From NCBI GenBank assembly GCA_037447605.1, contig CM074818.1:1066617-1130616 (forward strand): 64,000 nucleotides of DNA, in the 5' to 3' direction. The DNA is from Zygnema circumcarinatum SAG 698-1b (Eukaryota > Plantae > Zygnematophyceae). Each line of letters opens with the position of its first letter. The first letter of the stretch is position 1. Positions 27,233 to 51,336 of this stretch are shown here, in pieces. A program made the position numbers and the translations under genes. A model generated the notes under the pieces. That model worked only from the letters and a program-made list of their open reading frames with translations, was not told where the DNA came from and made no database searches.

Positions 27233-27496
27233 GCCCCCCCGGCAGGCTGCTCTGAAAGTCTAAGTGTCAAAGAGAGAGAAGGAGAGAGAGTCAGAGGAGC
27301 GTGAGCTCAATGCTGGTACAAAGAGCTCCGATGGTCTCCCATCCGAGCGCAGCCCCCTTAAGCTCCCCCCGTTGAACCCCCTACCAGCATGGAGGACCGG
27401 GAGCGGGACTGCCCAATCAGAGCCCGCCGCGTGGCGGAGATCCTTAACCGAGTTATCGGCTAAGGACAAGCCCGTGGTCTCGCCGNNNNNNNNNNC

Positions 27497-30400
27497 TGCA
27501 GGGGATTTAGAGGATGCTGACCAAAGTTCAAGAAGAAAGGAGTGGTACCGATTGATTCCTGGAATGCATTGTTAATGGCATACTCAGCCACCGGGAGCAG
27601 TTCATCCCATCCATCCGGGATGGGTCCCACATAATGCCTCAAATAGTCTTCCAGAATCCGGTTCACCCGCTCAGTGCGCGCTGCATTGCTCGCAGAAATT
27701 CGACCCGCTCAAGGCTTCAGGGAGTTAGGGTTTTCAATTTAGGGGTCGCCCAACCTCGCGTTCGCCGCGCGATGCAGTTCAGTCAGTCAATTCGCTATGC
27801 TCCATCGGTTTGGCCATCTGTCTGAGGGTGGAAGGCTGTACTCATAGCCTGCTTAGTCCCGATAATCCGGAGGATTTCTTTCCAGAAATGGCCGGTGAAT
27901 CGGGTATCACGATCTGATATGATCTCAGATTGAAGTCCATGTTGACTCCAGACCTTGTCAACATATAGCCGTGCTATCTCGTCGGCTCCCGCTGTCTTAG
28001 CAGTGGCTGCAAAATGCACCATCTTGCTCAGGCGGTCGACAAACACGAGGATGGAGTCAAAACCCCGAGCGGTCACAGGCAGGTCTGTGATCAGGTCCAT
28101 ACCTACACTTTCCCACTTCCTGTAAGGAGGGGCGAGGGGCTGGAGCAAGCCAGGCACCGGTCCGGTGCGAGGCTTATCCCGTTGACAAGTTGGGCATGCG
28201 AGTACATACGCCTCCACGTCCGCTGTAATTCCGGGCCACCAGAATTCTCGGAGCAGTGCTTCACGGGTTTTGGCAACTCCTATATGGCTCCTCGGTATCT
28301 TTAGGATCGCGGCATTCACTCACAAGAGTGAGCTCCCCATACGTATCCAAATTTTGGGCAATTTACTAATCGCTATCGCGGGTGCCAAAACTGTCTGAGC
28401 ACGAAGCTTGTCCTATAGCCATTGCCTTGGCCGCCCAGGAACAAAGGATCACCAGTGTACCCCTCCTGAATCATCTGTCTGAAATCAGAGAGAGCAGGAG
28501 GGTTGACTGCGTCACTGGTGGAGGGATTTATGACAAAGCATACTGGAGATGTAAACGCTGGGTTGGCCGGCCCTTCGTCTCCACCATCTCGTACCACCAA
28601 CACTCGAGTCGACGAGCGCATCATCCAGGCTAGATGAATGGGTTGCCTGCTCAGTGGGTCCGCTACATTCAGCCTTCCAGGCCTGTATACCCACTTGCAG
28701 TCGAACCGTTGGAGGAACTCAGACCAGCGTGCCTGCCGCCTCGAAAGAGTTTGCTGCGTGGAGAGGAACGTCAGTGGACGGTGGTCTGTGACCAGCGTGA
28801 CTGCCACCGCCCCCTCCAAATAGCAACGCCATGTCCTCAGGGCGTGAACCACGGCCAAGAGCTCTTGCTCTGTGGCGGAGTAGTTTCGCTCAGCTGGGTT
28901 CATCTTGCGACTTTCGTAAGCAAGAGGTTGGTCGTCTTGGAACAAGACCGCACCCAAAGCGAACTCAGAAGCGTCACAGACCACCTCATATGGTAAGGTG
29001 GGATCAGCTAACCTCAACGTAGGCGCTGTCACAAGTGCATGTCTAACACCATCAAAGGCCACCTGGCACTCTGGTGTCCATGCATACGCGACACCGGAAC
29101 GTGTCAAATTGGTAAGAGGTGTTTGTTAGTGTTAGTGTATGATAGTTAGACATTGTATGGCACACACTAACTTGTTGTGGTACTCAGTTTGTAGAACATG
29201 AGATCTGCTAGGCGTAGTACTCTTAGATTTAGGAATGTCGGTGCTCTGACTTATGGTGAGTGCGCCGCGAGTGCACGGAGTACGAACGAACGGCGCTGAT
29301 TGGTCGCGGCGCTGACNNNNNNNNNNCCATGTCTTAACAGCAGACACCTTGGCGGATCGGGCTTCAAGCCCTGATCATTCAAGATATGCCCAAGATACAA
29401 CAACTCCCGTTGCATGAAGTTACACTTCTTCCGCTTGGCATAAAACGTGTGTCTTCGCAGCACCTCAAACACCTTGCGCACATGCACGAGGTGCTCAGCG
29501 TTCGTCTTGCTGAATACCAGGATATCATCCAGGTAGTCCAAGACAAACTCATCCATGCCGACAAATATCTCGTTCATCACAGCTTGGAATGTCGCCGGAG
29601 CGTTGGTCAGTCCAAAAGGTAGCACCTTATATTGGAAATGACCAATCGGCGTCCGAAATGCCGTTTTAGGAACATCGCGCTATCCTCGCGGACACGGATC
29701 TGGATGGCAGGCCTCGGCAAGAAGGTCGGCAGAGCTGTAGGTGAACACCTTCTCGCCTCGAAGACGGCGTCTAGAAGATCATCTTGGCGCGCCGCAAAGC
29801 AAACTCGTTTCTTTACCGCGGGATCTTATTGGAGTGCTCGATAATCTATGCACATTTTCAGCACTCCATCCTTCTTCCTCGGCCTAAAATATGTAGGGGC
29901 CCCAAAGGGGCTCTCGGTGGGTTCAATCCAGCCCTTATCACGCAGATTGGCGAGCTGCTTTCGCATCTCCTCAGTCTCCTTTGGACTGAGCCTATAGATA
30001 GGCCTCCAAGGAGGTTTCTGTTCTGGCTCAAGGGGTATGGTATGTCCTACCCCGCGGGCTGGAGGCAAACCCCTTGGCAGATCGTCTGGGAACACATCCT
30101 CAAACGCCTTCAACAAAGGTTGAAATATAGTTGGAACAAGGGTATGGCTCACCAAGGTTGCCACTGACCCTTCGCTATGAGCATCCTCCGCTGCCGCCAT
30201 GACGGCACCATAAACAAGATGTTATCTGCTGTGCGTCTGCCTATTTGCATAGCCGCAGCACAGGAAATCCACAAAGACGATCAAGCAGGAGTGTTGGTCC
30301 CGGCGATTTCTGCTGCAGCGCCGCTATGCGCCTGCCTTCACCGCGAGGACGCAATTAGGACAAACCAGCTGGGCACCCATATGCGTCAGCCATTTGCTCC

Positions 30401-30776
30401 CCAAGATGAAGTCTGTTCCTGGGGCTAACAACGTCAACAAGCAGTTGACCACCCTAGAGTATGACTGAATCTTCAATTTCACGCTGACGCTGCCAGAAAC
30501 CTGACCCGTCCGTCCATCCCCGAAAGTTACACTATCGGAATGAGGCTGGACTGCAAACCCTGCAGTCCTGACAAAGGCTGCGCTAACAAAGTTAGCGTCC
30601 GCGCCAGTGTCCAGCAAAACCACTGCTGAGTGTCCATCGGCCGAACCCTGGAAGGTCATAGCACGATGAGCCAAGTGGAAAATGGACCGTAGCACATTCG
30701 GTGCGTGGGGGCGCGCTAACCGCCACACAAGGGAATGAGGAGATTTCACCAGCGCACTGGTGGAAGCTCCAGGCAC
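27497..30776 (-). mobile_element. Decayed Ty3/Gypsy (chromovirus-like) pol: protease-RT-RNase H-integrase
   Basis: VLLDTGADANFV (PR), MCIDYRAL, LPFGLTNAPATFQ and YLDDILVFS (RT), CDASEFALG...TDH...ADPLSR (RH), FVDRLSKMVHF...HPQTDGQT (INT). Contains frameshifts, stops and insertions. Confidence 0.92.
29122..29315 (+). mobile_element. Putative LTR start inserted into the Gypsy RT (truncated by an assembly gap)
   Basis: Interrupts the RT frame at APLTNLTR. Begins TGTTAGTGTTAGTGTATGATAGTTAG, similar to the reverse complement of 32345-32374. Confidence 0.5.
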
Positions 30777-30839
30777 CCACCTAAGAAGGGAGAAGCCCTT
30801 CCTCCAAAGCTTCGCTGGACCAAAGGATCTAAGAATTCA

Positions 30840-31830
30840 TTGGACAAACCATTGACGGGCAAATACCGACGCCCACCGTTGGAAACCAATCGGGTCACAC
30901 CGCCGCATCCACCGGTTCCAAACCAATGGTCGCTTTGATCTGGCCAAGACCGGCCGCAACCAAGCCGACCGGTTGCCTTCAACAAAGGATCCACCGGGTT
31001 GCATCCACACCGTTGCCAACCAAAGGCATCCATCGGTTCCAAACCAATGGTTGTTTCGACCAAGCAAGACTGCTGGCAACCGAATGGTTGTTTCGGTCCT
31101 AAGAACCATCGGGTTGCCAACCAACAATGGTTGTTTCGATTCGCCAAGACCGGGTTGGCAAACCGGGCCAATGGTTATATCCATAAATCAAAATGGTTGC
31201 AACCATTAAATCACTTCAGTTGTAGCTTAACCTAACACTAACAAAATGCCGCTTGCCATGTTTCGAGAAAACTATTACGCTTCTGGCTGCATGCATTCTG
31301 CATAACCGCATTTACTCTGGAGCCAGATTTCCATCCGCATTACACACCAGACGCATCGCTTCGTTACACTAGCTTGTCAACGCTGGCAACCTACCAAAAA
31401 CACATACTAATCTATTTTGCAAAAGGCATAATTTCGTAAATTCAATGGTTGCCAACCATTGGATCACCGGTTCAACCAAATGAATGGTTGTTTCACCATA
31501 CAATCGGGTTCTAACCCAAATGACCGGGTTTCCAAACTGGCATCCATCGTTCCAAAACCAAATAATGGTTGTTTCGATCCGGCACTGGTTGGCAACCGAA
31601 TGGTTGCCAACCAATGGCATCCACCGGGTTCAAACCAAATTTAATGGTTGTTTTGGCCCGAAGCTAATCGGGTTGGCAACTAATGGTTGTTTCGTCCGCG
31701 AACCACCGGGTTGCCAACCGCCGAATGGTTGTTTCGTCCGCGAACCATCGCTGCCAACCAAATAATGGTTGTTTCGTCCGCGAACCATTGGTTGCCAACT
31801 ACCGACCGTTTGTCTAATGGTCCGACTGCG
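30840..31830. repeat. Dense array of (C)CAATGGTTG(TTTCG)/GGTTGCCAACC motifs
   Basis: About 20 imperfect copies in both orientations, split by an AT-rich spacer at about 31210-31440. Confidence 0.75.
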
Positions 31831-32036
31831 GAAAGCTTTACCACTTTCCACTCACCGCGGATAAGCCCTCACCGCCACGCAGCCAGGGAGCGTGACTCGC
31901 AGATCGACATTACATGGTCTTTCGACCGCAGCAAGCGCAAGGCATCGAATGCACATTGCACTAAGGCATCACTGCCCATGGCATTCAAGATAATGACATG
32001 CCATTCATTCATCAAGACAGCATTCGNNNNNNNNNN

Positions 32037-32374
32037 GACAATCTGACGCCACTTCGCGCCAAGTCCAAATCAGCCAATCCAAAAGGCTGACGCCGCGCCA
32101 CGTCACTTCAAATTTGCGCGCAGTTTCGCGCGTCGCGTCACATCTTCGATTCGCTCCGCGTTCGCGTCTGCGCCACGTCACATTTCAAATCGTCGCGTCG
32201 CGCCTCGTCACTTCTGACTCCGCCGCGCCGCGCCTCTCCACCGACCAAAGTCCGTACCGCCGCTCGTCGGTCTAGGCGCACATCGCCGCCAAGGGCCACA
32301 CACAACACACGCACACAAAACTAATGTCCCAACAACAACTTGTCTAGTGACTAACTACTATACACTAACACCAC
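32037..32374 (-). mobile_element. Putative LTR fragment (5' end TGTGGTGTTAGTGTATAGTAGTTAG on the minus strand)
   Basis: TG terminus and similarity to the 29122 insertion; the inner end is lost in an N gap. Confidence 0.45.
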
Positions 32375-32506
32375 ATGCTGCTTTTGTTCATGTACATTTG
32401 ATGGCCTCGCCATCGTGAGTTCAATGCGATTCCATTGTCGTATTATACACTGTAAAAATACTCAGGTGCTAGTGTTGAGATCCGTACAATCGGACATACA
32501 GTCATA

Positions 32507-34502
32507 CAGTACCCCCCCCCAATATTTTCGCCATGGTTTCGGCAAATATTAGGGGGGGTCAGACCTTGACCATCGCTTATGAAATTCAAAGATTCCCTAT
32601 ATGGAAAGGTATTGATTTCGTTTCCAGGTTTCGGGTCGGAAGCCGCGGCTCCCCCAACCTGTCATGTCCTGTCCATACTACGGAATAGGTTACAAAAATG
32701 CCCCCAAATTTCCGAAATCCGCCGAAATCCGCTCGCCGAAACGGAGGCCCTGCGTTTCGGTTTTGTTGAAAAGGCAGCAAAATCCGCCGATGAGTAATCT
32801 TGCCCCGCCTTGTCGCCATTAGGGATGGCCCGCGTTATAAATTCCGAATATATTATATAATTTACAACGGGTTTACAAATAGTAATATATTACAAACTAA
32901 AACACTTTATTACATATATTATACCCACTTGTTTTGAACAATTAACGACCGTACGACGTACGACCGTACTCACCGTTAGAACGTGACTCGTTGTTCAAGG
33001 ATGTCGACCTACCTTTTGCCAATAATACTTTGAATGTTCAATGTACGACCGTACGACCGTACGACAACCGTACGACCGTATGACCAAGTACGGTCGTACG
33101 GTCGTACCATACCAAAATTAGGTCGTTTTGGCGTTGGCGTTGCGAAATGCGTCCGTCTGGTTCGTAGATGGACCGTACGACCGTACATGTTGTAAAGGCG
33201 TTGTAAATTAATATATATTAGCCGTTATCTAGTCGTCACAGTTGTATAATGTAATATATAATATATAGTCGTAACTACAGTCTAATCACGTTATAGTGAC
33301 ACTGTTTATAAGAACAGCATGGATATACTGACTTTTTTTCCGGGAACGGAATTGCACCACTGCAGATCCTGCGCCAGTAGTGACGCCATTACGGATATAA
33401 TGACGTTGAAAAACCCTGATTGTTACTATATATTCAAAATGTCGATATTATCCACCCACGTATTGGAATATGCGTTACAAATATATTTACGACCGTACAC
33501 ATTATCGACTAATATCGTCAGATATCGANNNNNNNNNNATTATCGACTAATATCGTCAGATATCGACTTGACCGTACATATCAAGTTGTCCGTACACATG
33601 CTCACTAGGGTTCGTACACACCTACCCACGTGACGACTGCCCAAAAAGTACAATGTACGGTATCAAAGTCGTACGGATATACCGCAAAAACATATGTAAT
33701 AACATTGTTACTATAAATGTGAAAGGACAAACGGGTCATTACCGATATAGTGACACAAATGTGTGGGGACCGACATGGACACTAACGTGATTAGACTGTA
33801 ATCCATCCCTAGTCGCCATGCGCGTCACGCACGTGCGAGCGTCTCTCGCACGTGTGAGACGCGCGTGGCGACAAAACGGAGGGCGACGGGCGGCGGGCGG
33901 CGGGCGGCGGAGGGAGCGCGGCGGGGCGAAAGGGGGGGGGTCAGACCTGGCTCGGAGATACGAAGGTAAAATAATTATTTTCTTGAATTCGCGGCGCCCG
34001 AACCTGCCGAACGGCCACTTTTTGCGAAAAAGGCCTGCCGTACACGGCGGAATAGGCCCGACGGGCTTACGAAATTGGTTTGGCGATGGTCAAGGTCTGA
34101 CCCCCCCTATTTAGGGGGGGTCAGACCTTGACCATCGCTTACGAAATTCCCGAATTCCTTATACTAAAAGTCACTTCTTTCGTGTACGAACTCCGGGTCG
34201 GGATCCGCGGGTCCGCCGTACATAGCCGTAACGAAATGCGTACCTAGCCAATGCTTAATTCGCCCGACAGGCTTACGAAATTGATGTGGCGATATGGGGA
34301 GTCAGACCTTGACCATCACCTACGAAATTCCCGAATTCCTTATATGTACTGTACTAAAAGTCACTTCTTACATGTACGAATTCCGGGTCGGGATCTGCGG
34401 CTCCGCCGAGCCCAGCCGTACCGAAATGTGTACCTGGCCAATGCTTAATTCGCCCGACAGGCTATTGGGTAGCGAAAATATTGGGGGGGGGGGGGGTAAC
34501 TG
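32507..34502. mobile_element. Non-autonomous Tc1/mariner (pogo-like) element
   Basis: TA|CAGTACCCCCCCCCAATATTTTCGC at the left and GCGAAAATATTG(14)TAACTG|TA at the right. Internal GGGGGGGTCAGACCTTGACCATCGC repeats in both orientations and a ~180-bp tandem duplication (34114-34465). Confidence 0.8.
32820..33811. mobile_element. Non-autonomous hAT element nested in the Tc1/mariner element
   Basis: TIRs TAGGGATGG...CCATCCCTA with a perfect 8-bp TSD GTCGCCAT (32812-32819 and 33812-33819). The AT-rich interior has CGACCGTA repeats. Confidence 0.88.
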
Positions 34503-35821
34503 TACGGAATATTCGTACGAATTTGACGTACGGAACTGTACGAGCCGAACAGTCCTTCGTGGTTCCACATCATGCTTTTGTCCATGTACATTTGATGGCT
34601 TCGCCATCGTGAGTTCAATGCCATTTTCCTCGCCATTCACTTGTCGTCTTTGGGTGATTATTATAAATAGTAGAAGAAGGTGTGGCTTTTTTTGTTGTGT
34701 GCATAAAGACTTTTCATCAGCATTTTGTTGTTGCTCTTCTTCTCTTATCCTTCTCATGACGCCTTTACCATTGTAGCAGCTTTACCACATGTCCCATCAT
34801 CACCGCCCCCCTTGAAGCTGCTCTTGTAGACCTATTTTTCAATACAGCTATTTTGAGACTAGTGTAAGGTGTCCTAGAGCTTCCTTACGGCTTGAAGCTT
34901 CAATTATCATAATCAATCTCTGTCTAACTAGCAAGAAAACGAAGAAAAGACGTTAAATACATATAAAGTATACTGTATTTTAAAATGTGGTATAATACGC
35001 ACGTATTATATGGTGTATTATACACGCGTTTGATACATACGGATCACTACTCCCGTCTGCCCGAGACGGGCTGCGACCGAGCGCGCGCGCACAAGCAACA
35101 AGAGATGAAGGGAGGCGGGGCAAGAGTCCGGGGCGGGCCAGCCATTGCACGGCCAACCATTGGTAATTGCCATCGTTTGGCTGACAACCTGAGAGACCCT
35201 CGCGCTGAAAAACAAAACCAGATCGTTTCGCCACTCGCCTTCGGTTCGCAACCATTGGCAACCAACGTTACCAACCGTTCGTTTCTGTCGGCCATCGGCA
35301 ACGGTTGGCAGGGTCACCCACCGGCAGTTGGCGGCGGTTGGTCAGGTCCCTAAGTAGGGACCGCGGCCGGGAGGGGCCCTCCGGCCGGCACAGTGCGGAC
35401 CCGTACGGCGGGGGCGAATTGTACGGACCATGCGACCATCCGTACAAGTTGCTTACGCGAAAACCCTATCCGATTTTTTGCCGGACTCGATCCTGCGACC
35501 TTCAAAACTAGTTTTTACCGTGCAAACCATCTATGCGAAGGAGTGGTATTTTCGTTATAGCATAAATAAAAATGTTCTCAACTTTATTTTGAACTCACAC
35601 AAATACATCGGTCAAAGTCGACGAGCAGCGCACGGCCGAGTATTGGAGTCAGTCGCGCGAGGGCGAGGGCGCGCAGTGATACAGACCGGTGGGGGAGAGA
35701 GGGAGGGAGGTGGCGGTGGGGGAGGGGAGGGGAGGGCTGCCCAGCACAAGCACGTGCGCCACCGTAGCAGCGGGCAACGCTGGCGCCCCAGAGCGGCGAG
35801 GGCAAGGCCAGCCTGCGTGCC

Positions 35822-38800
35822 ATGTTAGAGCCCGCCGCCAACTCATCCTCCGCGCAGGGGGCCAGCACCTTCGCCGACCCCATCGCCATGCTCGGGGGCT
35901 CGAGCATTGGCGGGCCTTCTCTCTCCTGCTCCGTCAGCGAGGAGCTCTTCCAGAAGTGGCTCACCGGAACTGAGGTTTCCTCCTTCCCCAGCCCGCTGGG
36001 GTGGCCTTGTCGTGGGGGTGATTCCCTGGAGTCAAGGCGATGAAAGTGGAAGGGTTGACTGTAGGCTGGTCCTGTTCGGATTGTAAGACTTTACTGTTGT
36101 CAGGCTGCATGAATAGGCGGTAATGTGAGATCCCTAAAAGAGTTTCGGGAGGTTTTCGTTGCTGCTTTTGGACAGAATCAACAGGAGCAGTCGCAACTCG
36201 GCACTGGAAACATTCTGAGAACCCGACAGGCAACTCGCAGGTGAGAAGTGGCTATTGGTAGAGACAGTTTGATTTCCTTTTAGTGCATAATGATAATGGG
36301 AAGGTCCCACTTTCCTTACCTGCGGACGCGCTTGACTCCGCTATTAGTTGCTGCTTTCGGTAAATCAAAAAAGTCCAACGGGTAATGTCGTATATTGTTT
36401 TTTTTTACTCGAGGTTCCTTTACACAATTTCTTAAGGAGTCCATGACTGTTTCCTGCGGGGTCCCAGGTCGTCTAGTGAATTGGCGGCTGTGATCACAAA
36501 CCCTCAACAAAGGCTTGGCGGCAGTGGAAACAATTTTGGGCGTTTCGAGAGTGCAAACGATGCTGCGCTGCTTGCAAGCTCCTGGTTTGGCGATAGTGGA
36601 CTTACAGGAGGAGCGAGTTTAAAGCTCAGGTACTGTTGTACTGCAACTTAATCATTTTTAGGGCACCTATGGATAGAGGGACAGTCATTAAGTGAAGAAC
36701 TATTGTATGCATGCCCTACATTTAGTTTAGAGAGGTCCCAATGAAATTAGGGTTTTCAGGTGGGACATTGGTCCCAACTTAATATGAGCGAGAGAGCTTG
36801 ACCTACGCCGAGTTTCCAAGAGGCGTGTAATCCGTACCGCAGAGCACAACTAATTCGAAAAGGTTGATGCTAGGCCTCCTGGCGGACTCTCAAAAGGAAG
36901 CAACACATTGAAAGCTTTTTGCACTCCTTTCTAGGACATCGAAGATGCTAGCTTGTCAAGGATCTGGTTGACCTTGTCGTAAGTTCAACAATACGAGATT
37001 TAGGGTAGTGTCGACAACAGGCCAGTTGAACCCTCGCCGGGATTGTAAATGGTCCGCAGCGTTAATAAGAGATGGTGGACGGCACTCCCCCGCCATAGCT
37101 GGTTCAAAGAGGCACAGAGACAGCCTAACAGCTTCAACCAACTTTGAGGAAAGCTTGAAGGTTGCATCTAAGGAATCTATCCGGAATCTATAAGCAGGAA
37201 TTTTGTTGTCCGCTCTTTACTCTTTTGCAGAGTAGTTCATAATATACCAGGAAAGGGCAGGACTGAGGAAGTTCCGGCCGGTGGCCTTTGTGTAGAGCAA
37301 GTTATTATCTGGCAGTGGTTTTAGTGGAGGGAGTTATGGACCAGGAACAGTGAATTGTTCTGGCGGTATGGGTCGAAGAGGGAGCAATGGAGTTGCTCTA
37401 GTAGTAGCATTCTCGAGCTCTGGAACAGTTATTCCAATGACAGAATGCTTCCAATTGTGCGCACTGGAACTGTTCCCTTCATATTCGGAAATATTGGAAA
37501 GCTTTTCGGAGCAACCCTGTTAAATGCCCAAAGCCGCAATTATGCTTGTAAAAGTTACGACGGATACAAGGGCAGCTATGCCTTCTGTCTTGGTGAAGCA
37601 CCCAGTTGCGCATTTAACAGGGATGCGAAGGAAATGGGAATAGGTCGCAGAAACAAGAGCAATGTTTTTAAGTTTGGTAGAAGAGTTTAGGACTTGGGTT
37701 GAACGGAGGCTGCAATGTTTCTAGCTGGCAGCGATCTTAAAGGATTCAGATAATTCTGAAAGAACGTCGCCTTGGTTCGAATGTGGAGCACACACAATTC
37801 TGCGTTTTAAAGGGGCAGAGCGCATTCACTAAGGCAGCAAGTGCGAACCTTAAGTCTTTACAAGCACTGACAGAGCATTAGCCCTCCGATGGCAGCCTTT
37901 GGAAGTGAAGATTTTCCAGGATTCTGGACTATGTTCATTGCCACGGAAGCTGGAGGTCTCATATGGCCGGTTTTTTTTCATGATTTGTATCATGCAGTGA
38001 GACCCCGAAGCTGGATGGCAACAGAGCAATGCAAAGCTTGGCGTCGCCGAACCTTCTTGCAGCGGTGAGCTCTGCTGTCTTTTCATTCTGAAATCTAAAT
38101 CAATCATGTTAATGACTTGCAACTTTCAGAGGCAGCAATTGACTAGCACAAAGGTCCCACGCTATCCCTTCAGAACGCTAGTTTACCTGGAAAGACTGTT
38201 CTTGCACATTCCTAAAAACGTGGTTTCGGCAAGAGTGTGCCCTTAGAATGCTTGAAAGCATTTGAGGAGATGAAAGCCGTAGCTCATCTTCAGGGAAGGA
38301 AGATGAAGGCGGAGGTTAAAGAGTTGTGCTGCCAATATTGACTCCATGCGAGGGAAAGCGTAGTGATGCATTGAAGCTAAGCGAGAGAAGGATCTGCCTC
38401 TCCTGCCCTTTTAGCATCTCGGGCCACATACTAACAGAGCCAAGAAGCCATGGGATGCTGCTTTCTGCAGGCCAACATTTTGCAGCAGTCGCTATCCTCG
38501 CCCATGACTCGCAGCCGCTCCTCTGAATTACGGTGCGAAATTCCTTCCCTGCTTGCCCAGCTTATAATTCTTGCTTTGTGGCGTGCGTAGTATATTCTTG
38601 TATTATTATTATTTTCCTTATTATTATCATTCATCACCCTCCTCGTCCTTCTGCTCTGCTTCTGAAAAATAAGCAAAAGTAAGAGGGCAGGAGGAGGGGA
38701 GGGAGAGTTGACATGCGTGGAACTCACTCGGTCACTTCCTTTTTTAGGGTTTAGGGTTTGGGGTTTGGGCTGACTCCGCGCAACCCGCCATGGGCCGTGC

Positions 38801-41800
38801 TGGAACCTTCGGCTGCTCTCTCCCCCGGCTCCCATGCATGCATGCATGCATGCAGGCCCCATCCCATCTATGCCATGGCCATAGATGCAGGCATGAGCCG
38901 CCATGGATGCGGTTCATGTCCGTACATGCCGTACAATTATGGCCTTTTTTACCGGTCAGCCCTTGACCCTCGGGGCCCTGCCGGGCCGGCGTTGACCAGC
39001 CGTGAAAGGCGGCGGTCGGCGGCCCTTGCCGAGGCAGCCACGTGGTTGACGCTGATTTGTCCCGCGTGACGTGGCGACACGAGGGGGCGGCCGATTCGAC
39101 TCCGGAAAGTCAGAGACCGCCGCCCCGCGCGCTGGCCGTTGGTCCGTACGGTCCCCGCCAACGGCCGCCACCGCCCTGGCTTATTGCAGTTGTCCGTACG
39201 GCGCTGAGAGCCCATCGCAGCCGTCGATCGCTGAGTCCCGCCGCGCTGGCGCGTTCTGAGCCTTCCGATCGGCCCCGCCCGGCGGCGCTCGTCGGCGGCC
39301 GCGCGGTTCAGCACCGACTTTTCTGTCAGGCCGCCCCTGCGCAGCGAAGTCGTCGCTCGGGCTGACGTCAGCAGCCAGACGAAAGATAGGGGCGGAAACT
39401 GGTACGGACGGCGTTCGCTGTTGGAGTCGTGTGCGACGGAACCACCGCGTCACGTGACGCGTGCTTGCTGCTTCGCCGTTAAAACATATAGAAAACTCGG
39501 AACACAGGAAGCGGGCTGTTCTATGTGGAAAATATTGGGAACCACAGGGAACGCGCCCTGCGCCAGGTGTAACTGTGGCTGCATGACGCGTGGCGTTCCA
39601 TGCAACCGTTACCATACATTGCGTTAGGGTCCATGGGGAGGACTGCGGAAGGGGGGATTACCGGATAAGCGGTTTTTGTATTTCCTGGTCACTTTCAAAG
39701 ACATGCGCTTTCCGAATGTCTGCTTTCCACACGTCATTTGCCACTAGTTATTTGAAAGCCCTCCACCTTTCACACAGCATTCAACCATGAAAGTGGTGAA
39801 TTCCTCTTGCAAGGCGGCCGCTGCCTAGGCCTCCTTAGAAAGAAGTAGCGTGACAACCTTATCAAGGGGTTGATAAGTTTGTCCCGTTTCCCGTCTTTCC
39901 CGTCCCGTTTTTCTTTTCCCGGTTTCCCGTCTCGTTTCCCCCCTTGCAGAGACTTCCCGCCCATTAAGTTCATCCTTACACTTCTCACGTAGCTGCATGT
40001 CTTTCCATCCTAAGAGTAGTCCCTTGCATGTGCAGACGGCTTTTGGGGCAGCATGGTTTGGGAACGAGCAGCACCGACGAGTTGCTGCAGCGTCTCTCCT
40101 CCTCGGCCGCACAGAGCGAGATGGGCTCTCCCTCCTTGGGGGGGTGGAGGACACCTCCGCATGGAGGGGGGGCCACTATGGCAGGCGGAGGGCCATCCAT
40201 GAACATTGGGGGAGTGGGGGGGGGTGGGGGGGGGCGGAACGGGGCTTTACAAGCAGGCCCACGAGGGCATTCAATGTTCACAGCTGCCGCTTCCTCTCCC
40301 TCTCCCTCTCCCTCCATGCATTCTGCTCCTACTTCTGCCTCACCTCTTCCCCCACTGTCCAACTCCACTACCACTCAGTCTGCAGCCCCTTCTGCCCCGG
40401 CAGGCACGCGGGCTCCCGGAAACGTGTCAGCAGTCGTCAGTATGCTGAAAGGGTGAGAACCACATGTGTGCTTTCCGCTTCCTTATTCTGTACTGAAAGC
40501 CCCATCTTCCCGCTCCTGGCTATTCCAAAGTAGCGGAAAGACCCTCTCCTTCGTTTAGCCGTTGATTTAAAAAGCTGAATTTCCGTTTGCAGAAGCATCG
40601 AGAGGAAGAAGCAGCTCTCTGTCAAGCAGCCCTCCCCTGCTCCCCCTGAAGCAAGCCCATCCTCCGGCGGCCCTATGACCGTCCTACAATTCCAACAACT
40701 GCGCTCTCGCCTTGCCCAAGTGGCTGCCCTAAACTCCTCCCTCGGCCAGCAGGACGCGGGGAGCGGCCGTGCCTCTCCCTCCCACTCCCACTCCCACCTC
40801 GGCAGCGCCCCTCCCCCCCCTCTCCCTCTCAGCCCCCAAGATTCCCCCCGAGCCTCTGCCTCTGACGGCAGCGGGGGGCCCACCCTTCAGCTCCCTCCCA
40901 CGCGGCCCCCTTCCGTCCTTCTTGCCTCTAAACGGAGCATACCGTCGGGCTCTGTTTCGCCGGAAGAGCCCTCCGCGAAGAGAGTGGCGGGTGGGAGTGG
41001 GGCAGCCATGGCGGGGGGGGGAGGGAGCACGGGCACTTCCGCAGCAGGCGGACGAGGTGGGTTGGTGGGAGCTTGAGTCACGATGTGATTGTGAGTTAAC
41101 TACAGTGAAACGATTACCAAGATCGCAGTTCATGTAGGAGAAGAAGAAAGAATAGAACTAAACGGAAAATTGAATGTGAAAAGCTATACCTTCCGACAAG
41201 ATTATTACTTTGTGATGGGCGACAATCGCCGAGGTGGAAAGTGGGGATGTTTTTTTTTTCTGATTTGGAAGTGAGTCGGTGTGTTGTTCGTTCGATGTGT
41301 GGAATGGAGAGTCGTGTTTTGGGATTGAACTTTTTTTTGGGTTATGGAATGGAATTGGCAGGTAACGGAGATGGGGAGGTTCGTAAGGTACATGCTGCCT
41401 GCCTTTCCTTTGTGTGAATTGTTTTCGCTGTTCAATCTTAGTGCAGGTGTACATGCTCAAGTTTGCACAATTCAGCTGCCTGTAATGATGAAGTGACTAT
41501 GGGCAGAACGGGAGTTAGTATGCTAACTTACAGGCAGCTAATCGCATTTTAACCTTGAAATTCCAGATGCAGCTCATGATGCTCTCTTCTCTGTGCTCGC
41601 GCAATAGTTTAGGGGGTTCATTTTACTACTCAGGTAATTTGGCTTTGATTTTCGTAGCCTCTGAAAGTAAACAGTTATTGCAAATGTGCTGAGGAAATTT
41701 TTTGAGGCAATTTATAGCTCTAACGTCACGTCGATCTCCTTCGTATCCCTGTCCCTCCCTGCAGGTGCAACCCCCTTCCATTGTCATCAACAGGCCTGAA

Positions 41801-42842
41801 ACTTTGTTGCGTTCCGCATCTATGTCGTCACCCGGGACAGGTATCTTCCCCCCGCCCGTTTTTCCTTTCAACGTAAGCTTTCGGTGAAATGCATCACTAA
41901 TGCCTCTCCCCTTTATCCAAACGGTGGAGATAATGTTCTCATGAGGGAAATGATGTGCTGCTTCAGTGCCAAACAACAGGGATGCGGGAGTGACTGTAAA
42001 GTGATCGCCCGTTTTGATCTCTGTTTGTTCGTTAAAGAGGACCTGTCTGTTCCCGCCAAACGATCAGAAACACTTCTCAAATCGCTGAGCATGTGATTGA
42101 AAAAATATTGCCTGCAGGTAGTGGGGCGGGCCAAACACGACAATACCGGGTGGAGCGGCAGCGGAAGTAAGCCCTTTCCATTGTCCACTTTCCCACACAT
42201 AATCCATAGTTTTGCCCTTTTTTACCTAGTTTGTACCTAGTGAAAGGATCGCTTTGGGAAATAGACAATTGTCAGACTGAGCAAAATCTGGGGTGTTTCT
42301 GCAGACTGATGGAAGCAAAAGGTAGAGGTGGCAGCACAGCGGTCCCCAGCAGTGATGTACAGGCTCTGAGGAAGAAGTGCGAAAGTTTAGAGACAGAAGT
42401 GCGCAGCTTGAAGACGTTCCAAAGCTTCATGAACAGGTATGGGACACGCATCTTGAGAAGCATCACCCTCGTCTTCTTCTACCAGTCGGATGGATGGATT
42501 TACCTCTTGCTTGGGTGGAGCGTAGACCTTAAGGTTCACTTTTTATAGTTACCTCAGCTTATGGAATGTTTCAGCAACAAATGGCAACTGCTTTTGTCAG
42601 TCACTGATGCGAACCATTTGTCAGCTGTAATGTCCACCTGCTGTGTGTGAAATGTGACCGGGTTCCGTTGTTGAAGTTATGTCAACCCTGTGTGTTGGGC
42701 ATGCAGGAAGGATTCGGAGCAGACAACGAAGATAGAGGAGCTAGAAGCTCTGAATTCGTCGTTGACAGAAGAGCGGGACCGGCTCCTGGAGGAGCTTGTA
42801 CGATATCGATCAATGGGAGAAGATAACATGCAAAGTGATTGA
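35822..42842 (+). CDS. CYCLOPS: CYCLOPS/IPD3 symbiosis-pathway transcription factor homolog, ~470 aa; exons 35822-35974, 38471-38532, 40036-40452, 40593-41056, 42118-42166, 42305-42436, 42707-42842 (possible extra exon 41765-41840)
   Basis: Family motifs occur in order: PIAMLG...SEELFQKWLT; PMTRSRSSELRR; VVSMLKGSIERKK; RVERQRKLMEAK...SDVQALRKKCESLETEVRSLK...SFMNRKDSEQT..IEEL...ERDRLLEEL. The seven exons total 1413 nt in frame with GT-AG introns. Confidence 0.9.
38950..39620. promoter_or_regulatory. CpG-rich promoter-like island inside CYCLOPS intron 2
   Basis: GC/CpG-rich segment resembling the window's promoters, with CCGTACG motifs and CACGTG boxes. It is preceded by TTTAGGGTTTAGGG and a (CATG)n tract. 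Confidence 0.4.
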
Positions 42843-43975: not shown

Positions 43976-46900
43976 ATGGCGGAGCAGGCGGAGTCGGAGC
44001 AGGCCATGGCCATGGCCATGGCGGGCGAGCCTCCCGCTCCCGCTCGCGCCGCGGCGCCTCCTCCTGCCGAGTCCCTCCCCGCGCCTCTCGAGCGCGCGAT
44101 CCCTACTGTGCCGCCGTCCGATTCGAGCAGAGCGCCTGCTCACAGTGAAGGAGATGCCTGCACTCGCCTCGCCTCGCCTGGCGGGGAGGCTCGTCCTGGC
44201 AACGAAGCCGGCTCGGGGGGGGCGTGTGAGAGAGAAGGTGTAGAAGAGTTGAAGGGTGGCGATGGTAGGAGTGGTGAAGAGGGACCTGCAGCGATGGATG
44301 TGGGGAAGGAGAGCGCGTCTGCACAGGAGAGGAGAGCGGAGGAGAAGAGCGAGGATGACCTTGTCGCAACAGTCAAGCTGCTGCAGCTGGCCCTCGGATA
44401 TGTATCAAGGAACGTTTCGCTGCCACACGCGCTTCAAGAAGTCCTTCTACGCATAGTGGACGGACCTTCATCAGAAAGCAGACTTGTCAAGGATAGCGAG
44501 GATGCGGTACAACATCCTGGACGGGTTGCGAAGGTGAGCTCATTCTATTAGGCACTGCCAAACTTTTCTGTATTATGTTGTAAGAGCAACCTGCCATCTT
44601 TAACCTAACTTTGATCCACTTTCGTTCTAAGTGCACGTTGTTTTATCTAAAGATTATCATTCCAAAGGCTTCTGTGATTCTCCCTCTGAAGGAAGCCGTC
44701 TCTCTTATGTTCGTGAACCCTTTTCTAAACTGACACTTCGTGTAGGAGCAAATAGAGATCGTCCTGTACAACAAACACCTCCGTAAAATAAGGAAAAGTT
44801 TTGCGAAGGCCGCAGGCTGTTCCAATTATTCAAAAACCATCTGGAGCAGGAGACTTATTGAAGGGCTTCAGCAGAGCTGTTCGGTGCCAACGACGTGGTC
44901 TTAGTGCTGCAGAACTTCGAATGGAGCGTGAGAGTGTCACTCAAAGACTTATTAACATGCGAAAGGTGGAATTACAAAGTGAGTTCTGCTTCGCACTGAG
45001 GCAATGTTCCATTGTTTTAGGATAGACCTATCCTTTTCCTGCATACAGGAGGTCATTGTTCATGTCTGAAACGGCGCTGAAGCGACTACCGTACCATTAT
45101 GATAAGGAATATTCTCGTAAATAATTTGTTTGTTTCCCTTTGGTTGGTTATTGCTTTGCAAATGTGATATTTGAGTTAATGCTGATGTCGATTTTCCAAT
45201 TGTAGATATCAAAGCACTATGTTAATTCATTTTAAACCAAACCCCTTTGCATAGCAGTCATGTTGAGAGGCATTACCTCTTATATTTGTTTCTGAACTTA
45301 GATTTTTGGATTCCTTTGGTATCGTCATGTTTTTGTGGGCTCTGTGGGATGCCCATGGAACATGATAATATTTTGTTTTGGTTTTACACTGTTTTAGCAA
45401 CACCTAAACCATTATCGACAGAACACCTAAGTTTGTTGATGTGTTCTCGACAACATAGAAGATGTCTGGTTAGCCATTTATCAGATTATTTATCTCATTT
45501 TACTTTGTTTCGAATGGCAGATCTGGCACATCAGGTGTGGGACGAAGATGTTCGACGAAAGGCTGCGATTGAACTGAAAGCCATAAAGGTAGCTAATTTA
45601 TATAAGCATTATTTGATTGAAGGGTGACATCGATTTCCATTCATGCCGCGTGCCTTCCACCACTCCACGTATTCTCAAGCTCTATGTTGTGAAGGCTTCC
45701 TGCTGCAGTATTAATCATTTTTGCTGAGTTGCATTAAGACTAGGTGGTTTTTTGACTCATGAGTGGATTTTTGAAGGGTTTCACATTCTGAACTAGATTG
45801 TATGTCGGCATGTCTGATTCCTTTCAAGTTGATTTAGCTCAAGAAGTACTTGTCCTGCTGTATTTTCTTATTGTGGATATTTTCTACTGGGAATGGAATT
45901 ATGCAGCTCTTGGATCTTCAAAAGCGAGTCCGATTTCAAGTTGCAGCAGAAGCAAAGCTGCTGGCTATGTGCGGCAAACCCAACCAAGAGCTCTACGACT
46001 GGGGCATGCTGCGGTTGAAACGTGCAGATGTGGCTGCTTCATTGGCCCGCTGGGATCCTCGAGCCGGCAGTGCAGGCCAGTCTGCGGCAGAGATGGACAT
46101 TCGGCAGCGGCGCAAGCGTGAAGCAGAGGCATGTTAAGCGTGTCTGAACAAATTTAAGTTCGATAGTGGATGTTGGCCGTCATGATGATAGGGTGCAGTT
46201 AGAATACCGTCACTTTTAGCACCTTGGGAAAGAAGGAGTTATTTGGAAAGCATATCGGTTTAATTGATATCTGATTGGTAAAGCAGGAGTGTACGGAAAC
46301 CCTAAAAACCCTAAAGTACGTATTAGAGGAAAGATTTGCATGCTTTCCATCGGGGGACTTATGTACTGAGTGGGTTAGCAGGTGCGTGTTCTTTTTTTTC
46401 TTTCATACAGAGGAAACAGCGTGAGGAGGACGAGGAACAACAGAGGAGTGTTCAAGCTCTCACGCGCTTCACTACGGAGCTGCAGATTGCCCTTCGTGAG
46501 ATAATGTTGCAGGCACAAGCAGCAGCGAAGCGACGTAAACAGAGAAATGATATGGTGGTGGTGCGTGCATTAATTCACACTTGCTTATCTTGTCCGTGTA
46601 TGTGGTGTTGGAGGAGCAAGATTAGCACTTAATTGTCAATGACGTCCTACAAATCATTATGTCTTTGGGAATTGATGAATATATCTTGCTTGTGTTTTTG
46701 CTGGCTCAGCTTTTAATACCAGTTTCAAAAAACTTGCAAAAATATAGTGTGATTGTATAGCATTCTGAAAAGGTGCTGACTATATATGGCCGTGTCTGCA
46801 GACATGGCACATAAAGCAGAAGCAACGAGCTTCCAGAGCAGAAAGGCTGCGTGTTCAGGCGTTGAAGACAGGGGACCAGGAAGCCTACCTCCAGCTAGTA

Positions 46901-49900
46901 GAGGAAAGCAAGAATGAGCGATTGAAAACTCTACTTGGAAAAACAGATGAGCTTTTGCAAAGACTGGGGGCCATGGTTCAACAGCAGAAGGACTTACCTC
47001 TTTTTTCGTCGATTCCAAAAGAACAGAAAGCGAAGGATAAGGGAAATAAGGAGGTCAGTAAGGAGAAGGAGGGTGGCGAGACAGGGGCAGTCGAGGACCA
47101 AGCTTCAGTCAAAGGGGCCGCAGGAAAGAGAGATTTGATGGAAGGGCAGCGGAAATATAACATGGCTGTACATTCGATCGAGGAGACTGTTACTAAGCAA
47201 CCAGAAATCCTAGAGGGAGGGCAGTTAAGGGAGTATCAGCTGGAAGGACTTCAGTGGATGCTCTCTCTTTATAACAATAACTTGAATGGCATTTTGGCGG
47301 ATGAAATGGGATTGGGAAAGACAATTCAGACTATTGCTTTGCTGGCATATTTAGCAGAAACCAAAGGAGTTACAGGTCCCCACTTGATATTGGCTCCAAA
47401 GGCTGTTCTACCGAATTGGGCACATGAGTTTGCGACCTGGCTGCCAAGGTATGTACAGAAGTCATGCCTCCTCTCCTGAGAGAGCTGAGGAATGCTGATG
47501 TTGGAATGAAGGTTAGAGAGTCGATTTCTACTTTTCAGATGGAATTTGAAGACTGTGTCCGGACTTGCATGATATCACGTTCATTCACTTTTTGCATGTG
47601 CGTTTGCTGTGAATTGTGCGTCCATGTTACACGCTTATCTTGGAAGTTTGTTCTTGGTTTTGCAGCATGGCTGTCATTGTGTATGACGGTAAGCAGGAAG
47701 ACAGGAGAGCCCTTAGGGGAGAAGGGTTTGCTGCGGAAGGCAAATTCAACGTGATGATCACGCACTATGATCTCATTATGCGCGACAAAGCTTTTCTTAA
47801 GAAGATCAGGTGGCACTACCTCATCGTTGACGAGGGGCACCGATTGAAAAATCACGAATCTATGTTGGCAAAGACGCTTATGGCAGGGTAAGTTGGAAGA
47901 TTTAATTATTTTCAGATGCGAATTGCTTTATGCCCTTGCACACAAGGTGATTCTACTGAAATTTCGCGGCAGCGCCTTAAGGTGCAGTCGTATGCAGAGC
48001 CGTTTTCAAGCACTGTTAGATTTCTTTTTGTGTGTACCGTTTGTGGAATGTCTGAGTGGTTGTGGATGACGAAATCCGAGAAAGTTACGACATTTTGACA
48101 TGCAGGGGAGGATGTGGGGGCCCGCAGTTACATGATCCGCCGGCGCCTTCTCCTTACAGGCACTCCTATTCAGAACAGTTTGGGCGAACTCTGGGCTCTA
48201 CTGAACTTTCTCCTCCCTGCTATCTTCAACTCCAGTGGAAACTTTGAGGAGTGGTTCAATGCACCATTTGCAGATAAGTCTGAGGTGGCGTTAACGGAAG
48301 AAGAAGAGCTGCTTGTCATTCGGCGTCTGCATCAGGTGGGCCCTCATTCCGTCAAAAACTTCAGCAGGGAGTTATCGTCGGGCTTACAGGTTGTACTGCC
48401 CAATGTCTCGCATGTGAAAGAAAGGCTTCAGCAACTTTCCTCGAGTCTAAATTGAAGCGGTATTGAAACCCAATTTGGATATTTTTTTTTTTAGGTGATT
48501 CGGCCTTTTCTCTTACGAAGAAAAAAGGGGGAAGTGGAAAAGCACCTTCCGCAGAAAACACAAGTTATTCTGAAGTGCGACCTGTCAGCCTGGCAGCGTG
48601 CTTACTACTCCCAGATCCTCGAAGTGGGGAAAGTTGGGCTGAAAGTGAGCCTAGATTCTGGGAAGAAGGGGCATTCGCGATCTTTGCTCAACACAGCCAT
48701 GCAGCTGCGCAAGTGCTGCAACCATCCATTCCTTTTCCTTGACTCGGACATTTTGGACCATCTCGATCGCATGGACATTGTTCGGGCAAGTGGAAAGTTT
48801 GAGCTGCTTGACCGGCTTTTGCCCAAACTGCAGAGAACTGGACATCGCGTGCTGCTGTTTTCTCAAATGACATCGCTGATGAATATTCTGGAGGAGTATC
48901 TGACATGGCGAGGATTCTGCTATATGCGGTTGGATGGAAACACAAAAACAGAGGAAAGAGGTGTTCTTCTATCCAAGTTCAATGCAGTGGACTCGCCCTA
49001 CTTCATGTTCCTGCTCAGCACTCGAGCAGGTGGGCTTGGCTTAAACCTGCAAAGTGCCGACACTGTGATTCTGTTCGATAGTGATTGGAATCCGCAGATG
49101 GACCAGCAGGCAGAGGACAGGGCCCATCGAATCGGTCAAAAGAAAGAAGTAAGAGTGTTTGTGCTGGTCAGCGTGGGCTCCATCGAAGAGGAAATTCTGG
49201 AGAGGGCGAAGACCAAGATGGGAATTGATGCAAAGGTGATTCAAGCTGGTCTCTTCAACACCACTTCAACAGCTGCAGAGCGTCGAGTGCTTTTGGAGGA
49301 GATCATGCGGAGGGGCACATCGCAGTTGGGGACTGACATGCCCTCTCTCCGGGAGACAAATCGGCTCATTGCAAGGACTGATGCCGAGTTTGAGCTGTTC
49401 GAAAGAATGGATGCGGAGCGATTGCGAACTCTCGGAGGGAGGAAGTCTCCATTGATGACAGAGGAGGAGGTGCCGGAGTGGGTGTTCTTTCAGAGAGGAG
49501 GGAAGGATGATAAAGAGAAGGAGAGTGAGGAGCTGGGAGCAAAGCGGAAAAGGACAGCGGTCGTGAATCTGGACGTGCTAAGTGAAGCCCAATGGAAGCA
49601 GGTAGAGGAGGGAGCAGACGTGTTTGAAGTGATAAAGGCTCGAGAGGAACGTACCCAAAAAATGAGGGAGAAACGGAAACAGCAGCTTGATCCGGATGCT
49701 GGAAATGATGAAGATGGGTTTGAAGCAGCGGAGGGTGAAGACGCTACATTTGTTCGGCTCAACCCTGAGGACACGGGAGCCAAGAAGAGACGAAGAGCAG
49801 AGGAGAGTGAGAGAGATAATGATTTGAATGGTCAGGTCGGTAGCGGTCTTGCAACCCCACCATTGAAGAAGCGGAAAGTTGCTGAACCTCAAGGGCAGTC

Positions 49901-50525
49901 TGGCAAATCGATTGCAGCTCTGACGACTAATGTAAAGATAAGTTCTGGAGAAGCAAGTGGTAGGAAACAGGATCAGGGTGGCAGTGTTTTCAATATTTCA
50001 AAGCCACGTTTTGATGATGTCAGGACAGGAAGTGAAACACATGTTGCTTCTAGCACAGCAAAAGGAGTTGGGAGAAGAAGATCTGGTCTGGCCCGGCCCC
50101 GTAAACTTGAGCGTCAGCCGGTCGCCCTTGACAGTGCAGAGGAGGATGAGGCTACGGAGGTCAGCACTCATGAGGAGCAGAAGAAGGACATGGAGGTCAA
50201 TGCTAGAGATAGTGAAGAAAGGAGGTCGGGAAGGAGACGTTCCAAAGCGGGAAAGTTGAGAACGCTGAACTTAGTAGACGAAGGGGGGGCAGAGGCGGGA
50301 AGCAGTGCAAGAGTATATAATGACCGGCAAGAGGACAAGACCGAAAACTGGTGGGAGGAGTCTGTGATGGATGGGCACGACCAGCCTGGAGGTCACCGTG
50401 ATGTGAAAACGAACAAAAAAATGAGCTTGATAATAAAGCTGAAAAAGACTGGTGCGGAAATGGAGAAGTCAGCATCCTCCAGTATTCCAAGGAGCGGCGC
50501 CAAAACCAGACGTTCACAGAGATAG
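43976..50525 (+). CDS. CHR12: SWI2/SNF2 chromatin-remodelling ATPase, CHR12/CHR23 (MINU) type; exons 43976-44533, 44816-44978, 45521-45588, 45907-46128, 46411-46560, 46802-47448, 47666-47887, 48128-48335, 48495-50525
   Basis: [56 protein letters not shown] and [11 protein letters not shown], plus an HSA-like [16 protein letters not shown] segment and SnAC region. No bromodomain. Confidence 0.92.
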
Positions 50526-51336
50526 AGAGACCCAACTTGGTGACTGGGTGGAGCCGTTTGGGTTGTTAGCATTCTTTCATTCTCAGAAGTTAGCTTAAAT
50601 TTCTTATACAGGAGCTTGCTCTTTCTGCCACTAAAGATTGTGACATTTCTTGTGCTGTAAATACGGCGTAGCACAGTGGCAGTTCAATTTTGCTTTTTCC
50701 TTAGTTTTCATGAGCACATTACTGGTAGCACCGTTATCTGCAATGTCAAGCTTTGCAGCATGCTTGTGTTGCGGTAATTAATCACAAAATTGTTAACCAG
50801 AGAGCGCAATTGTTCATTGCTTGGTTGCAAGACAGGAGTGTGCAGGACTGACAGCAGCAGGAAGAAATGCTTTTGAGTGAAATTGCTCCAAACAAACGAC
50901 AAATCGAGTGGTTCTCTCCTTGCATTGCAGAGTGCGCCATGGCACTTGGAAACACGGCTTGAAGGGAAACTTTGAACTTTACGAGCTCAGCTGCTCTGCA
51001 TTTGCTTTGCGCAGCTTATTGGAAACGGCCATATATTACTATAAGGCCTGCCTCCCTCCTCCCGGGGAAGCGCAAAAGAATAGGACGGCGTCGCCCTGGC
51101 AAGTAATGCGTAGCATATCGTATCGTACATATTTTACATATCGTGGGGCGTTGTATAGATATACCGAGCGGCTTTGGGATATCTCGATATGTCCGCTCCG
51201 CGCACAGGGGAGCCGGGCCGGGCCGCGGTTGGGACCGCTGTGCGCGGAGCGGCCAGGGTGGCGGTGCGGGCACAGCCGGGGGCGGCAGGAGGGGGAGGGA
51301 GGGAGGCGGGAAGCGGAGGGAGAGAGGCAGCCATGG

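What the first reader, a model, noticed from the sequence alone, without database searches (positions are those of the whole stretch)
35822..42842. Hidden seven-exon CYCLOPS/IPD3 gene, a symbiosis-pathway transcription factor in an alga-like genome
Seen: small exons over 7 kb splice in phase to a ~470-aa protein carrying the CYCLOPS signature blocks in order (SEELF.KWLT, MTRSRSSELR, SMLKG..ERKK, and the RVER.RK...SFMNRKDSEQ coiled coil). The 62-nt exon 2 and the last exon are not shown in that frame in the ORF track. Known: CYCLOPS is the CCaMK substrate that activates arbuscular-mycorrhizal and nodulation genes, and homologs have been reported in zygnematophyte algae. Inference: this is a divergent homolog that may predate the symbiotic role, with unknown targets.
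Basis: partly seen in the sequence, partly recalled or inferred. Interest (0 to 1): 0.9.

Follow-up and report, generated by a model that had tools for sequence, protein, structure and literature searches.

The report
Algal CYCLOPS gene, twelve exons
This is a real, transcribed algal copy of CYCLOPS, the gene switch that land plants use to accept fungal and bacterial partners; such algal copies are already published, and the only new detail is that one of its two activating phosphorylation sites looks worn down.

Summary
The gene is real and is a CYCLOPS/IPD3 orthologue, but the seven-exon model is wrong. All ten introns of two land-plant CYCLOPS genes fall at the same motifs and phases. Exon 11 finds named CYCLOPS proteins and groups with Closterium homologues. 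Algal CYCLOPS is published (PMC11096116, PMC11725925); the genome is probably Zygnema circumcarinatum, so this may be the published Zci_13230 (inferred, not shown). Likely mechanism: a basic helix plus coiled coil binds DNA as a dimer, restrained by an N-terminal region that CCaMK phosphorylates. The S154/155-type site (S166) is intact. The S50-type site (S39) has Cys where 115 of 117 land-plant proteins and two other algal-type genes have Arg, and the S14-type block is missing. So the two-site switch may be partly rewired here. An intron-5 promoter giving an auto-active form is not supported. The scan noted the S50 point before on this same stretch, not on other DNA. The joined protein was not searched or folded.

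The parts
35822..35974 (+). Coding exon 1 (aa 1-51): start codon and SEELF..W block; S39 is the S50-type site, with Cys instead of Arg at -3; no clear S14-type block
   Evidence: in-frame stop 19 codons upstream of the ATG
36176..36240 (+).
   Evidence: joints in 3 runs; intron position and phase conserved
36468..36629 (+). Coding exon 3 (missed): completes RRSSSEL, S75, matching land-plant RRISTEL (probably the Medicago S81 site; inferred from position)
37998..38064 (+). Coding exon 4 (missed), ends in NLLAA like land-plant NLFLAK
38471..38532 (+).
38533..40035 (+). Intron 5 (1503 nt) with a GC-rich island at about 38740-39480; partly retained in two runs; alternative acceptor at 38755 gives a stop at codon 176
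40036..40452 (+). Coding exon 6: low-complexity Ser/Gly/Pro region ending in VSAVVSMLK
40593..41056 (+). Coding exon 7: begins SIERKK (only clear basic cluster outside the coiled coil), then low-complexity region; intron 6 before it is absent from the two land plants and a donor at the same place is present in Closterium
41362..41387 (+). Coding exon 8 (missed), 26-nt microexon
   Evidence: joints in 3 runs; matching residues in relative L001
41765..41840 (+). Coding exon 9 (missed): LRSASMSS, S491, matching land-plant RYGSVTS (probably the S407/S412-type site)
42118..42166 (+). Coding exon 10 (49 nt, same length as in both land plants): basic helix RQYRVERQR; land-plant KKRR is RQYR here
   Evidence: (loose end)
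42305..42436 (+). Coding exon 11: end of basic region and first half of the coiled coil
42707..42842 (+). Coding exon 12: second half of the coiled coil and stop codon; AATAAA at 42894

Best explanation
An intact, transcribed, 12-exon CYCLOPS/IPD3 orthologue of a zygnematophyte alga, inherited vertically from the ancestor shared with land plants (shown). It most likely works as in land plants: the C-terminal basic helix and long coiled coil (exons 10-12) dimerise and bind DNA; the N-terminal region (exons 1-5) holds it inactive until a nuclear calcium-activated kinase, CCaMK, phosphorylates R-x-x-S sites, chiefly S166 and possibly S75 in place of the weakened S39 (inferred from conservation). 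Its output in the alga is most likely a stress or developmental programme and not symbiosis (inferred from the moss result and from the absence of the downstream symbiotic GRAS factors in algae). Orthology about 0.98; CCaMK-regulated transcription factor about 0.7; stress/development output about 0.5.
For: Ten of ten land-plant introns match in motif and phase (about 5e-6 for the phase string alone under assumed phase frequencies). Exon 11 finds CYCLOPS-named proteins and algal relatives. Exon-11 tree separates window plus Closterium-type rows from land plants at 100/98. Spliced in three studies with no frameshift. S166 motif identical to 114 of 114 matched land-plant proteins. Model of the natural relative P0002 (84% identical over exon 11) gives a basic helix and a 66-residue helix, and its top two Atlas matches are CYCLOPS clusters (TM only 0.52-0.54). 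Land-plant mechanism: PMC5865340, PMC11725925. Moss CCaMK-IPD3 drives ABA and brood cells: PMC8819110. No symbiotic GRAS orthologues in algae: PMC6232258.
Against: S39 lacks the -3 Arg and the S14-type block is missing. KKRR of the land-plant basic region, taken from my own knowledge to be part of a nuclear signal, is replaced. In Zygnema CCaMK and CYCLOPS fall in different co-expression modules (PMC11096116). CCaMK in this genome could not be checked with the tools. No DNA binding, phosphorylation or localisation was tested.
Confidence: 0.68

Rival explanations
1. Orthologue, but uncoupled from the two-site CCaMK switch in this lineage: loss of the Arg at the S50-type site and of the first block reflects rewiring to one site, to another kinase (for example a CDPK or SnRK, which read similar R-x-x-S sites; own knowledge) or to partly constitutive activity.
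For: Arg at -3 in 115 of 117 land plants and in both other algal-type genes read here (RLNSEELF in Closterium L002, RISSEDLF in L003), but CSVSEELF in the window; both of those genes also have a first TRSIS.EL block that the window lacks on either strand. Separate co-expression modules in Zygnema.
Against: SEELF..W itself is conserved, S166, S75 and S491 keep R-x-x-S, and a kinase can still use a site without the Arg when docked. Only two algal comparators; no close relative's exon 1 was found. An unseen upstream exon could supply the first block (5' end not seen).
Confidence: 0.25
2. A promoter in intron 5 yields a short transcript translated from the ATG at 40028, which is in frame with exon 6, giving an N-terminally truncated, auto-active protein like IPD3-Min.
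For: ATG at 40028 is in frame and has no stop before exon 6; GC/CpG-rich island at 38740-39480 (66% GC); intron-5 contigs are present in two runs; truncated IPD3 is auto-active (PMC10874911).
Against: In X2 one contig runs unbroken from exon 5 through the intron (38503-40064). In X4 the depth after 38755 (33) is matched by retention (11.6) plus the alternative acceptor (24.4), leaving nothing for an internal start. Other introns are also retained at similar depth. The intron holds 25 ATGs. Contigs cannot show starts, so it is not excluded.
Confidence: 0.05
3. A chance assembly of motifs, a pseudogene, or an unrelated coiled-coil protein.
For: No Pfam family at threshold; middle half is low-complexity; full identity to land plants is confined to short blocks.
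Against: Conserved intron positions, spliced transcripts, open frame, profile hits. Pfam gives no domain for true CYCLOPS proteins either.
Confidence: 0.01

Closest known systems
CYCLOPS/IPD3 of land plants (Lotus CYCLOPS, Medicago IPD3; here compared through Lithospermum P0010/P0017, Tasmannia P0087, Neltuma P0126, Taxus P0014)
   Same: Order of blocks, all ten intron positions and phases, S154/155-type motif, RRxSxEL and RxxSxxS motifs, basic helix plus coiled coil.
   Different: One extra intron (SMLK|G); no -3 Arg at the S50-type site; no S14-type block; RQYRVER for KKRRVER; KTFQSFMN for KLNLSFMN; longer low-complexity middle (602 aa against about 500-570).
Zygnema circumcarinatum IPD3/CYCLOPS, Zci_13230 (PMC11096116)
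   Same: Same family and algal class; probably this very gene. Indirect signs: about 1177 windows of 64 kb fit a 71-Mb genome; a 2019 RNA run holds it while 2017 runs with the same species label do not, as expected for UTEX 1559 versus the misnamed SAG 698-1a.
   Different: Identity not shown: the paper's held text gives no sequence or coordinates for Zci_13230. The parts of the paper I read do not discuss its phosphosites or exon structure.
Closterium sp. NIES-65 / Yama58-4 / NIES-54 unnamed proteins (CAI6009162.1, CAI7862567.1) and unnamed relatives P0002, P0004, P0005
   Same: Share the algal-type C-terminal signature (R.RVER, KTFQSFMNR, EQTT); Closterium has a donor at the extra intron position.
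   Different: Closterium and L003 keep the -3 Arg at the S50-type site and an N-terminal TRSIS.EL block; the window does not. The organisms behind P0002, P0004 and P0005 were not identified.
Physcomitrium patens IPD3 (PMC8819110)
   Same: CYCLOPS kept in a plant without mycorrhiza; offers a non-symbiotic, stress-linked role.
   Different: Both regulatory phosphosite motifs are reported as strongly conserved in the moss protein; here only one is.

Membership tests
CYCLOPS/IPD3 | C-terminal basic region plus coiled coil homologous to CYCLOPS | tested here: met
   (E 2e-12 and 8e-11 for exons 11 and 12)
CYCLOPS/IPD3 | Conserved exon-intron structure | tested here: met
   10 of 10 land-plant introns at the same motif and phase
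CYCLOPS/IPD3 | S154/S155 phosphosite motif TRSRSSELR | tested here: met
   exon 5, S166
CYCLOPS/IPD3 | S50 site block SEELF..W with its serine | tested here: met
   exon 1, S39
CYCLOPS/IPD3 | Arg at -3 of the S50 site (typical feature, not a condition of orthology) | tested here: not met
   Cys in window; Arg in 115 of 117 land plants and two algal-type genes
CYCLOPS/IPD3 | Groups with CYCLOPS in a phylogeny against Lotus, Medicago and bryophyte proteins | tested here: inconclusive
   Exon-11-only, unrooted, 42 columns: sits with Closterium-type rows, 100/98 from land plants. No outgroup family, and no Lotus, Medicago or bryophyte rows were available; the joined protein was not used.
CYCLOPS/IPD3 | Transcribed and spliced | tested here: met
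   GT..AG joints in three runs of three studies; run type is not on record, but joined forms show RNA origin
CYCLOPS/IPD3 | Binds and is phosphorylated by CCaMK; CCaMK present in the genome | not testable with these tools
   No genome-wide search; the scan's notes hold no CCaMK entry, which means nothing. Zci_01672 is reported for Zygnema.
CYCLOPS/IPD3 | Nuclear localisation and binding to CYC-RE-type elements | not testable with these tools
   KKRR is replaced; ERKK remains; needs experiment
bZIP transcription factors | Pfam bZIP domain match | tested here: not met
   No bZIP hit for exons 11 or 12; only a precomputed PF00170 mark on the Closterium fragment P0009. It works like a basic-region coiled-coil factor but is not filed as a bZIP.

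The most novel reading that the evidence does not exclude
In this algal lineage the CYCLOPS double-phosphorylation switch has been rewired: the S50-type site has lost its kinase-recognition Arg and the S14-type block is gone, while other zygnematophytes keep both. The protein would then be a natural one-site or CCaMK-independent variant, which fits the reported lack of co-expression of CCaMK and CYCLOPS in Zygnema, and shows that the two-site switch is ancestral but dispensable outside symbiosis.
Probability: 0.25. Interest if true: 0.55.

Novelty: already known. Interest (0 to 1): 0.27.

Why it matters
Whether CCaMK and CYCLOPS already formed a working module in algae is named as an open question in PMC11725925. 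The ready-made CYC-RE:GUS assay has been run with angiosperm, liverwort and hornwort CYCLOPS-DD but, in the section read, with no algal one. The conserved ten-intron skeleton and the Arg-bearing S50-type site in Closterium suggest that the gene's layout and both phosphosite motifs predate land plants. The existence of the gene itself is not news.

Tried and rejected
Pfam on eight exons: nothing at threshold. PDB by sequence and by Foldseek: only generic coiled coils or noise. Atlas by features on exon 11: best 0.77, an unnamed streptophyte cluster, a lead only. Search for algal N-terminal fragments with a three-row alignment: only the query's own protein, so I could not tell whether close relatives share the Arg loss; that search sees only a limited length range. 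Scan of the window for an upstream S14-type block: best score 23 against 52 between the two algal blocks, none credible. I first took RRSSSEL for the S50 site; rejected after numbering in a legume protein put S50 at SEELF. Delaux 2015 is not held and is cited only through other papers. The sources of SRR8128908, SRR9302961 and GCA_041443025 were not found in papers. Zci_13230 neighbours were not found in supplements. Run X8 laid nothing. As the operators required, the spliced model was searched exon by exon by reference; the joined protein was built only inside scripts to check phase, length and residue numbers and was not searched, aligned or folded.

Full report
Observation. With exact ends (35822-35974, 38471-38532, 40036-40452, 40593-41056, 42118-42166, 42305-42436, 42707-42842) they have GT..AG introns and splice to 470 aa without a stop. 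A profile of 119 land-plant CYCLOPS proteins, run against every unjoined stop-to-stop segment of the window, ranks five segments of this gene at the top, and named CYCLOPS proteins hit the same places in order by tblastn. So the feature is real.

The model is incomplete. Contigs of runs X1, X2 and X4, from three studies, laid on 35860-41859 show eight successive GT..AG joints in all three runs and a loose end that continues into the exon at 42118. They add five exons: 36176-36240, 36468-36629, 37998-38064, 41362-41387 and 41765-41840. The 12-exon frame is open and gives 602 aa. The run type is not on record, but joined forms with intron ends removed indicate RNA. Introns 10 and 11 were outside the laid stretch; a relative's transcript (L001) reads continuously through the matching exons 8-12.

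Identity. Exon 11 alone, searched against 1.84 billion representatives, returned 16 proteins; ten align over the whole exon with the motif and the others are long repetitive proteins with partial or many stretches. Those with names are Closterium proteins, a Taxus protein and a Lithospermum protein whose cluster is called Protein CYCLOPS; that protein in turn retrieves 442 relatives, many named CYCLOPS. The strongest evidence is gene structure. Exact spliced alignment of Lithospermum (L004) and Tasmannia (L005) CYCLOPS gives ten introns each, with phases 0,2,2,0,2,1,0,1,2,2; the window's introns 1-5 and 7-11 have the same phases at the same motifs (after the WL..GE-type end of exon 1, inside RR, before the MTRSRSSEL exon, inside SEL-R-R, inside RVER..R-K, inside FMN-R-K). 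Exon 10 is 49 nt in all three. Intron 6 is extra, and Closterium has a donor at the same place. An exon-11 tree puts the window with Closterium and three unnamed rows, apart from 15 land plants at 100/98; it is short and unrooted, and the 'alga' label of the unnamed rows is my inference.

Organism. Not given. Nearest named relatives are Closterium. About 1177 windows of 64 kb fit the 71-Mb Zygnema circumcarinatum genomes. A 2019 run holds the stretch while 2017 runs under the same species label do not, which matches UTEX 1559 (2019) and the misnamed SAG 698-1a. I put this at about 0.75. If right, the gene is the published Zci_13230. I could not confirm it.

Regulatory sites. In a legume protein S50 is the serine of SEELF and S155 the serine in RSRS-SELR, matching the sites that activate IPD3 and CYCLOPS when made phosphomimetic (PMC5865340). 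In the window the second site (S166) is identical to 114 of 114 matched land-plant proteins. The first (S39) reads CSVSEELF: Arg stands at -3 in 115 of 117 land plants, in Closterium (RLNSEELF) and in L003 (RISSEDLF). Closterium and L003 also carry an N-terminal TRSIS.EL block, placed like the land-plant S14 block; nothing like it is in the window. Equating them with Medicago S81 and S407 rests on position and is inferred. An in-frame stop lies 19 codons before the ATG, but several AG dinucleotides lie between, so an unseen upstream exon is not excluded; the contigs run past the left end of the laid stretch.

How it likely works. Shown: intact, spliced orthologue with the family's domain order. 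A model of the natural relative P0002 gives a basic helix (30-48) and a long helix (59-124), and the first two Atlas matches are CYCLOPS clusters, at low TM. Inferred from the family (PMC8819110; PMC11725925; PMC10874911): the C-terminal part binds DNA, the N-terminal part inhibits, and CCaMK phosphorylation releases it. Inferred for the alga: the output is not symbiosis, since the downstream symbiotic GRAS factors are not found in algae (PMC6232258), and may be stress-linked development, as activated moss IPD3 raises ABA and induces brood cells. The main rival is partial uncoupling from CCaMK, suggested by the worn S39 site and by separate co-expression modules in Zygnema.

Intron 5. The island is GC-rich and an ATG at 40028 is in frame with exon 6. 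But intron-5 contigs are explained by retention and by an alternative acceptor at 38755, seen in one run, which gives a stop at codon 176. Contigs cannot show starts; I give it 0.05.

Novelty and verdict. CCaMK, CYCLOPS and a SYMRK pro-orthologue are published for streptophyte algae, and CYCLOPS for Zygnema. The finding is a correct family call on a known kind of gene, probably a known gene. Interest 0.27. Limits: the joined protein was not searched, aligned or folded, by the operators' rule; searches were exon by exon; only 6,000 letters could be laid; CCaMK in this genome could not be looked up.

Noticed in passing
window 26500-30800, minus strand: Ty3/gypsy-type retrotransposon remains: protease (30327-30776), RT/RNase H (28376-29107) and integrase (26504-27229) by Pfam; ends about 5 kb upstream of the gene.
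   Followed up: partly
window 30900-35000: Clusters of short dispersed repeats (a 26-29 nt unit at 31041-31787) and a perfect 27-nt inverted repeat at 34083-34138 with further copies at 32550 and 34293; looks like transposon ends or MITEs directly upstream of the gene.
   Followed up: no
window 43976-51600, plus strand: SNF2-family chromatin remodeller with SNF2, helicase C and SnAC matches, starting about 1.1 kb after the CYCLOPS stop; SnAC suggests the BRAHMA/SPLAYED type (own knowledge).
   Followed up: partly
window 18303-22505, minus strand: Two adjacent long open frames (620 and 727 aa) with no Pfam match and no usable Atlas hit for the longer one; unexplained.
   Followed up: partly
window 38532-38755: Alternative acceptor next to a short TTTAGGG-like repeat, used in run X4 at roughly half the contig depth of the main joint; yields a 175-aa N-terminal product or a decay target.
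   Followed up: partly
L002 3729 and 3837; 10649-11559: The Closterium NIES-65 gene has local duplications: a second SEELF block about 110 nt after the first, and decayed second copies of the coiled-coil exons; the database model covers only the last 215 aa.
   Followed up: no
L003 1288-1323: In this relative the S154-type motif reads TRSKSAEIR, so it is the second site that has drifted there while the S50-type site keeps its Arg.
   Followed up: no
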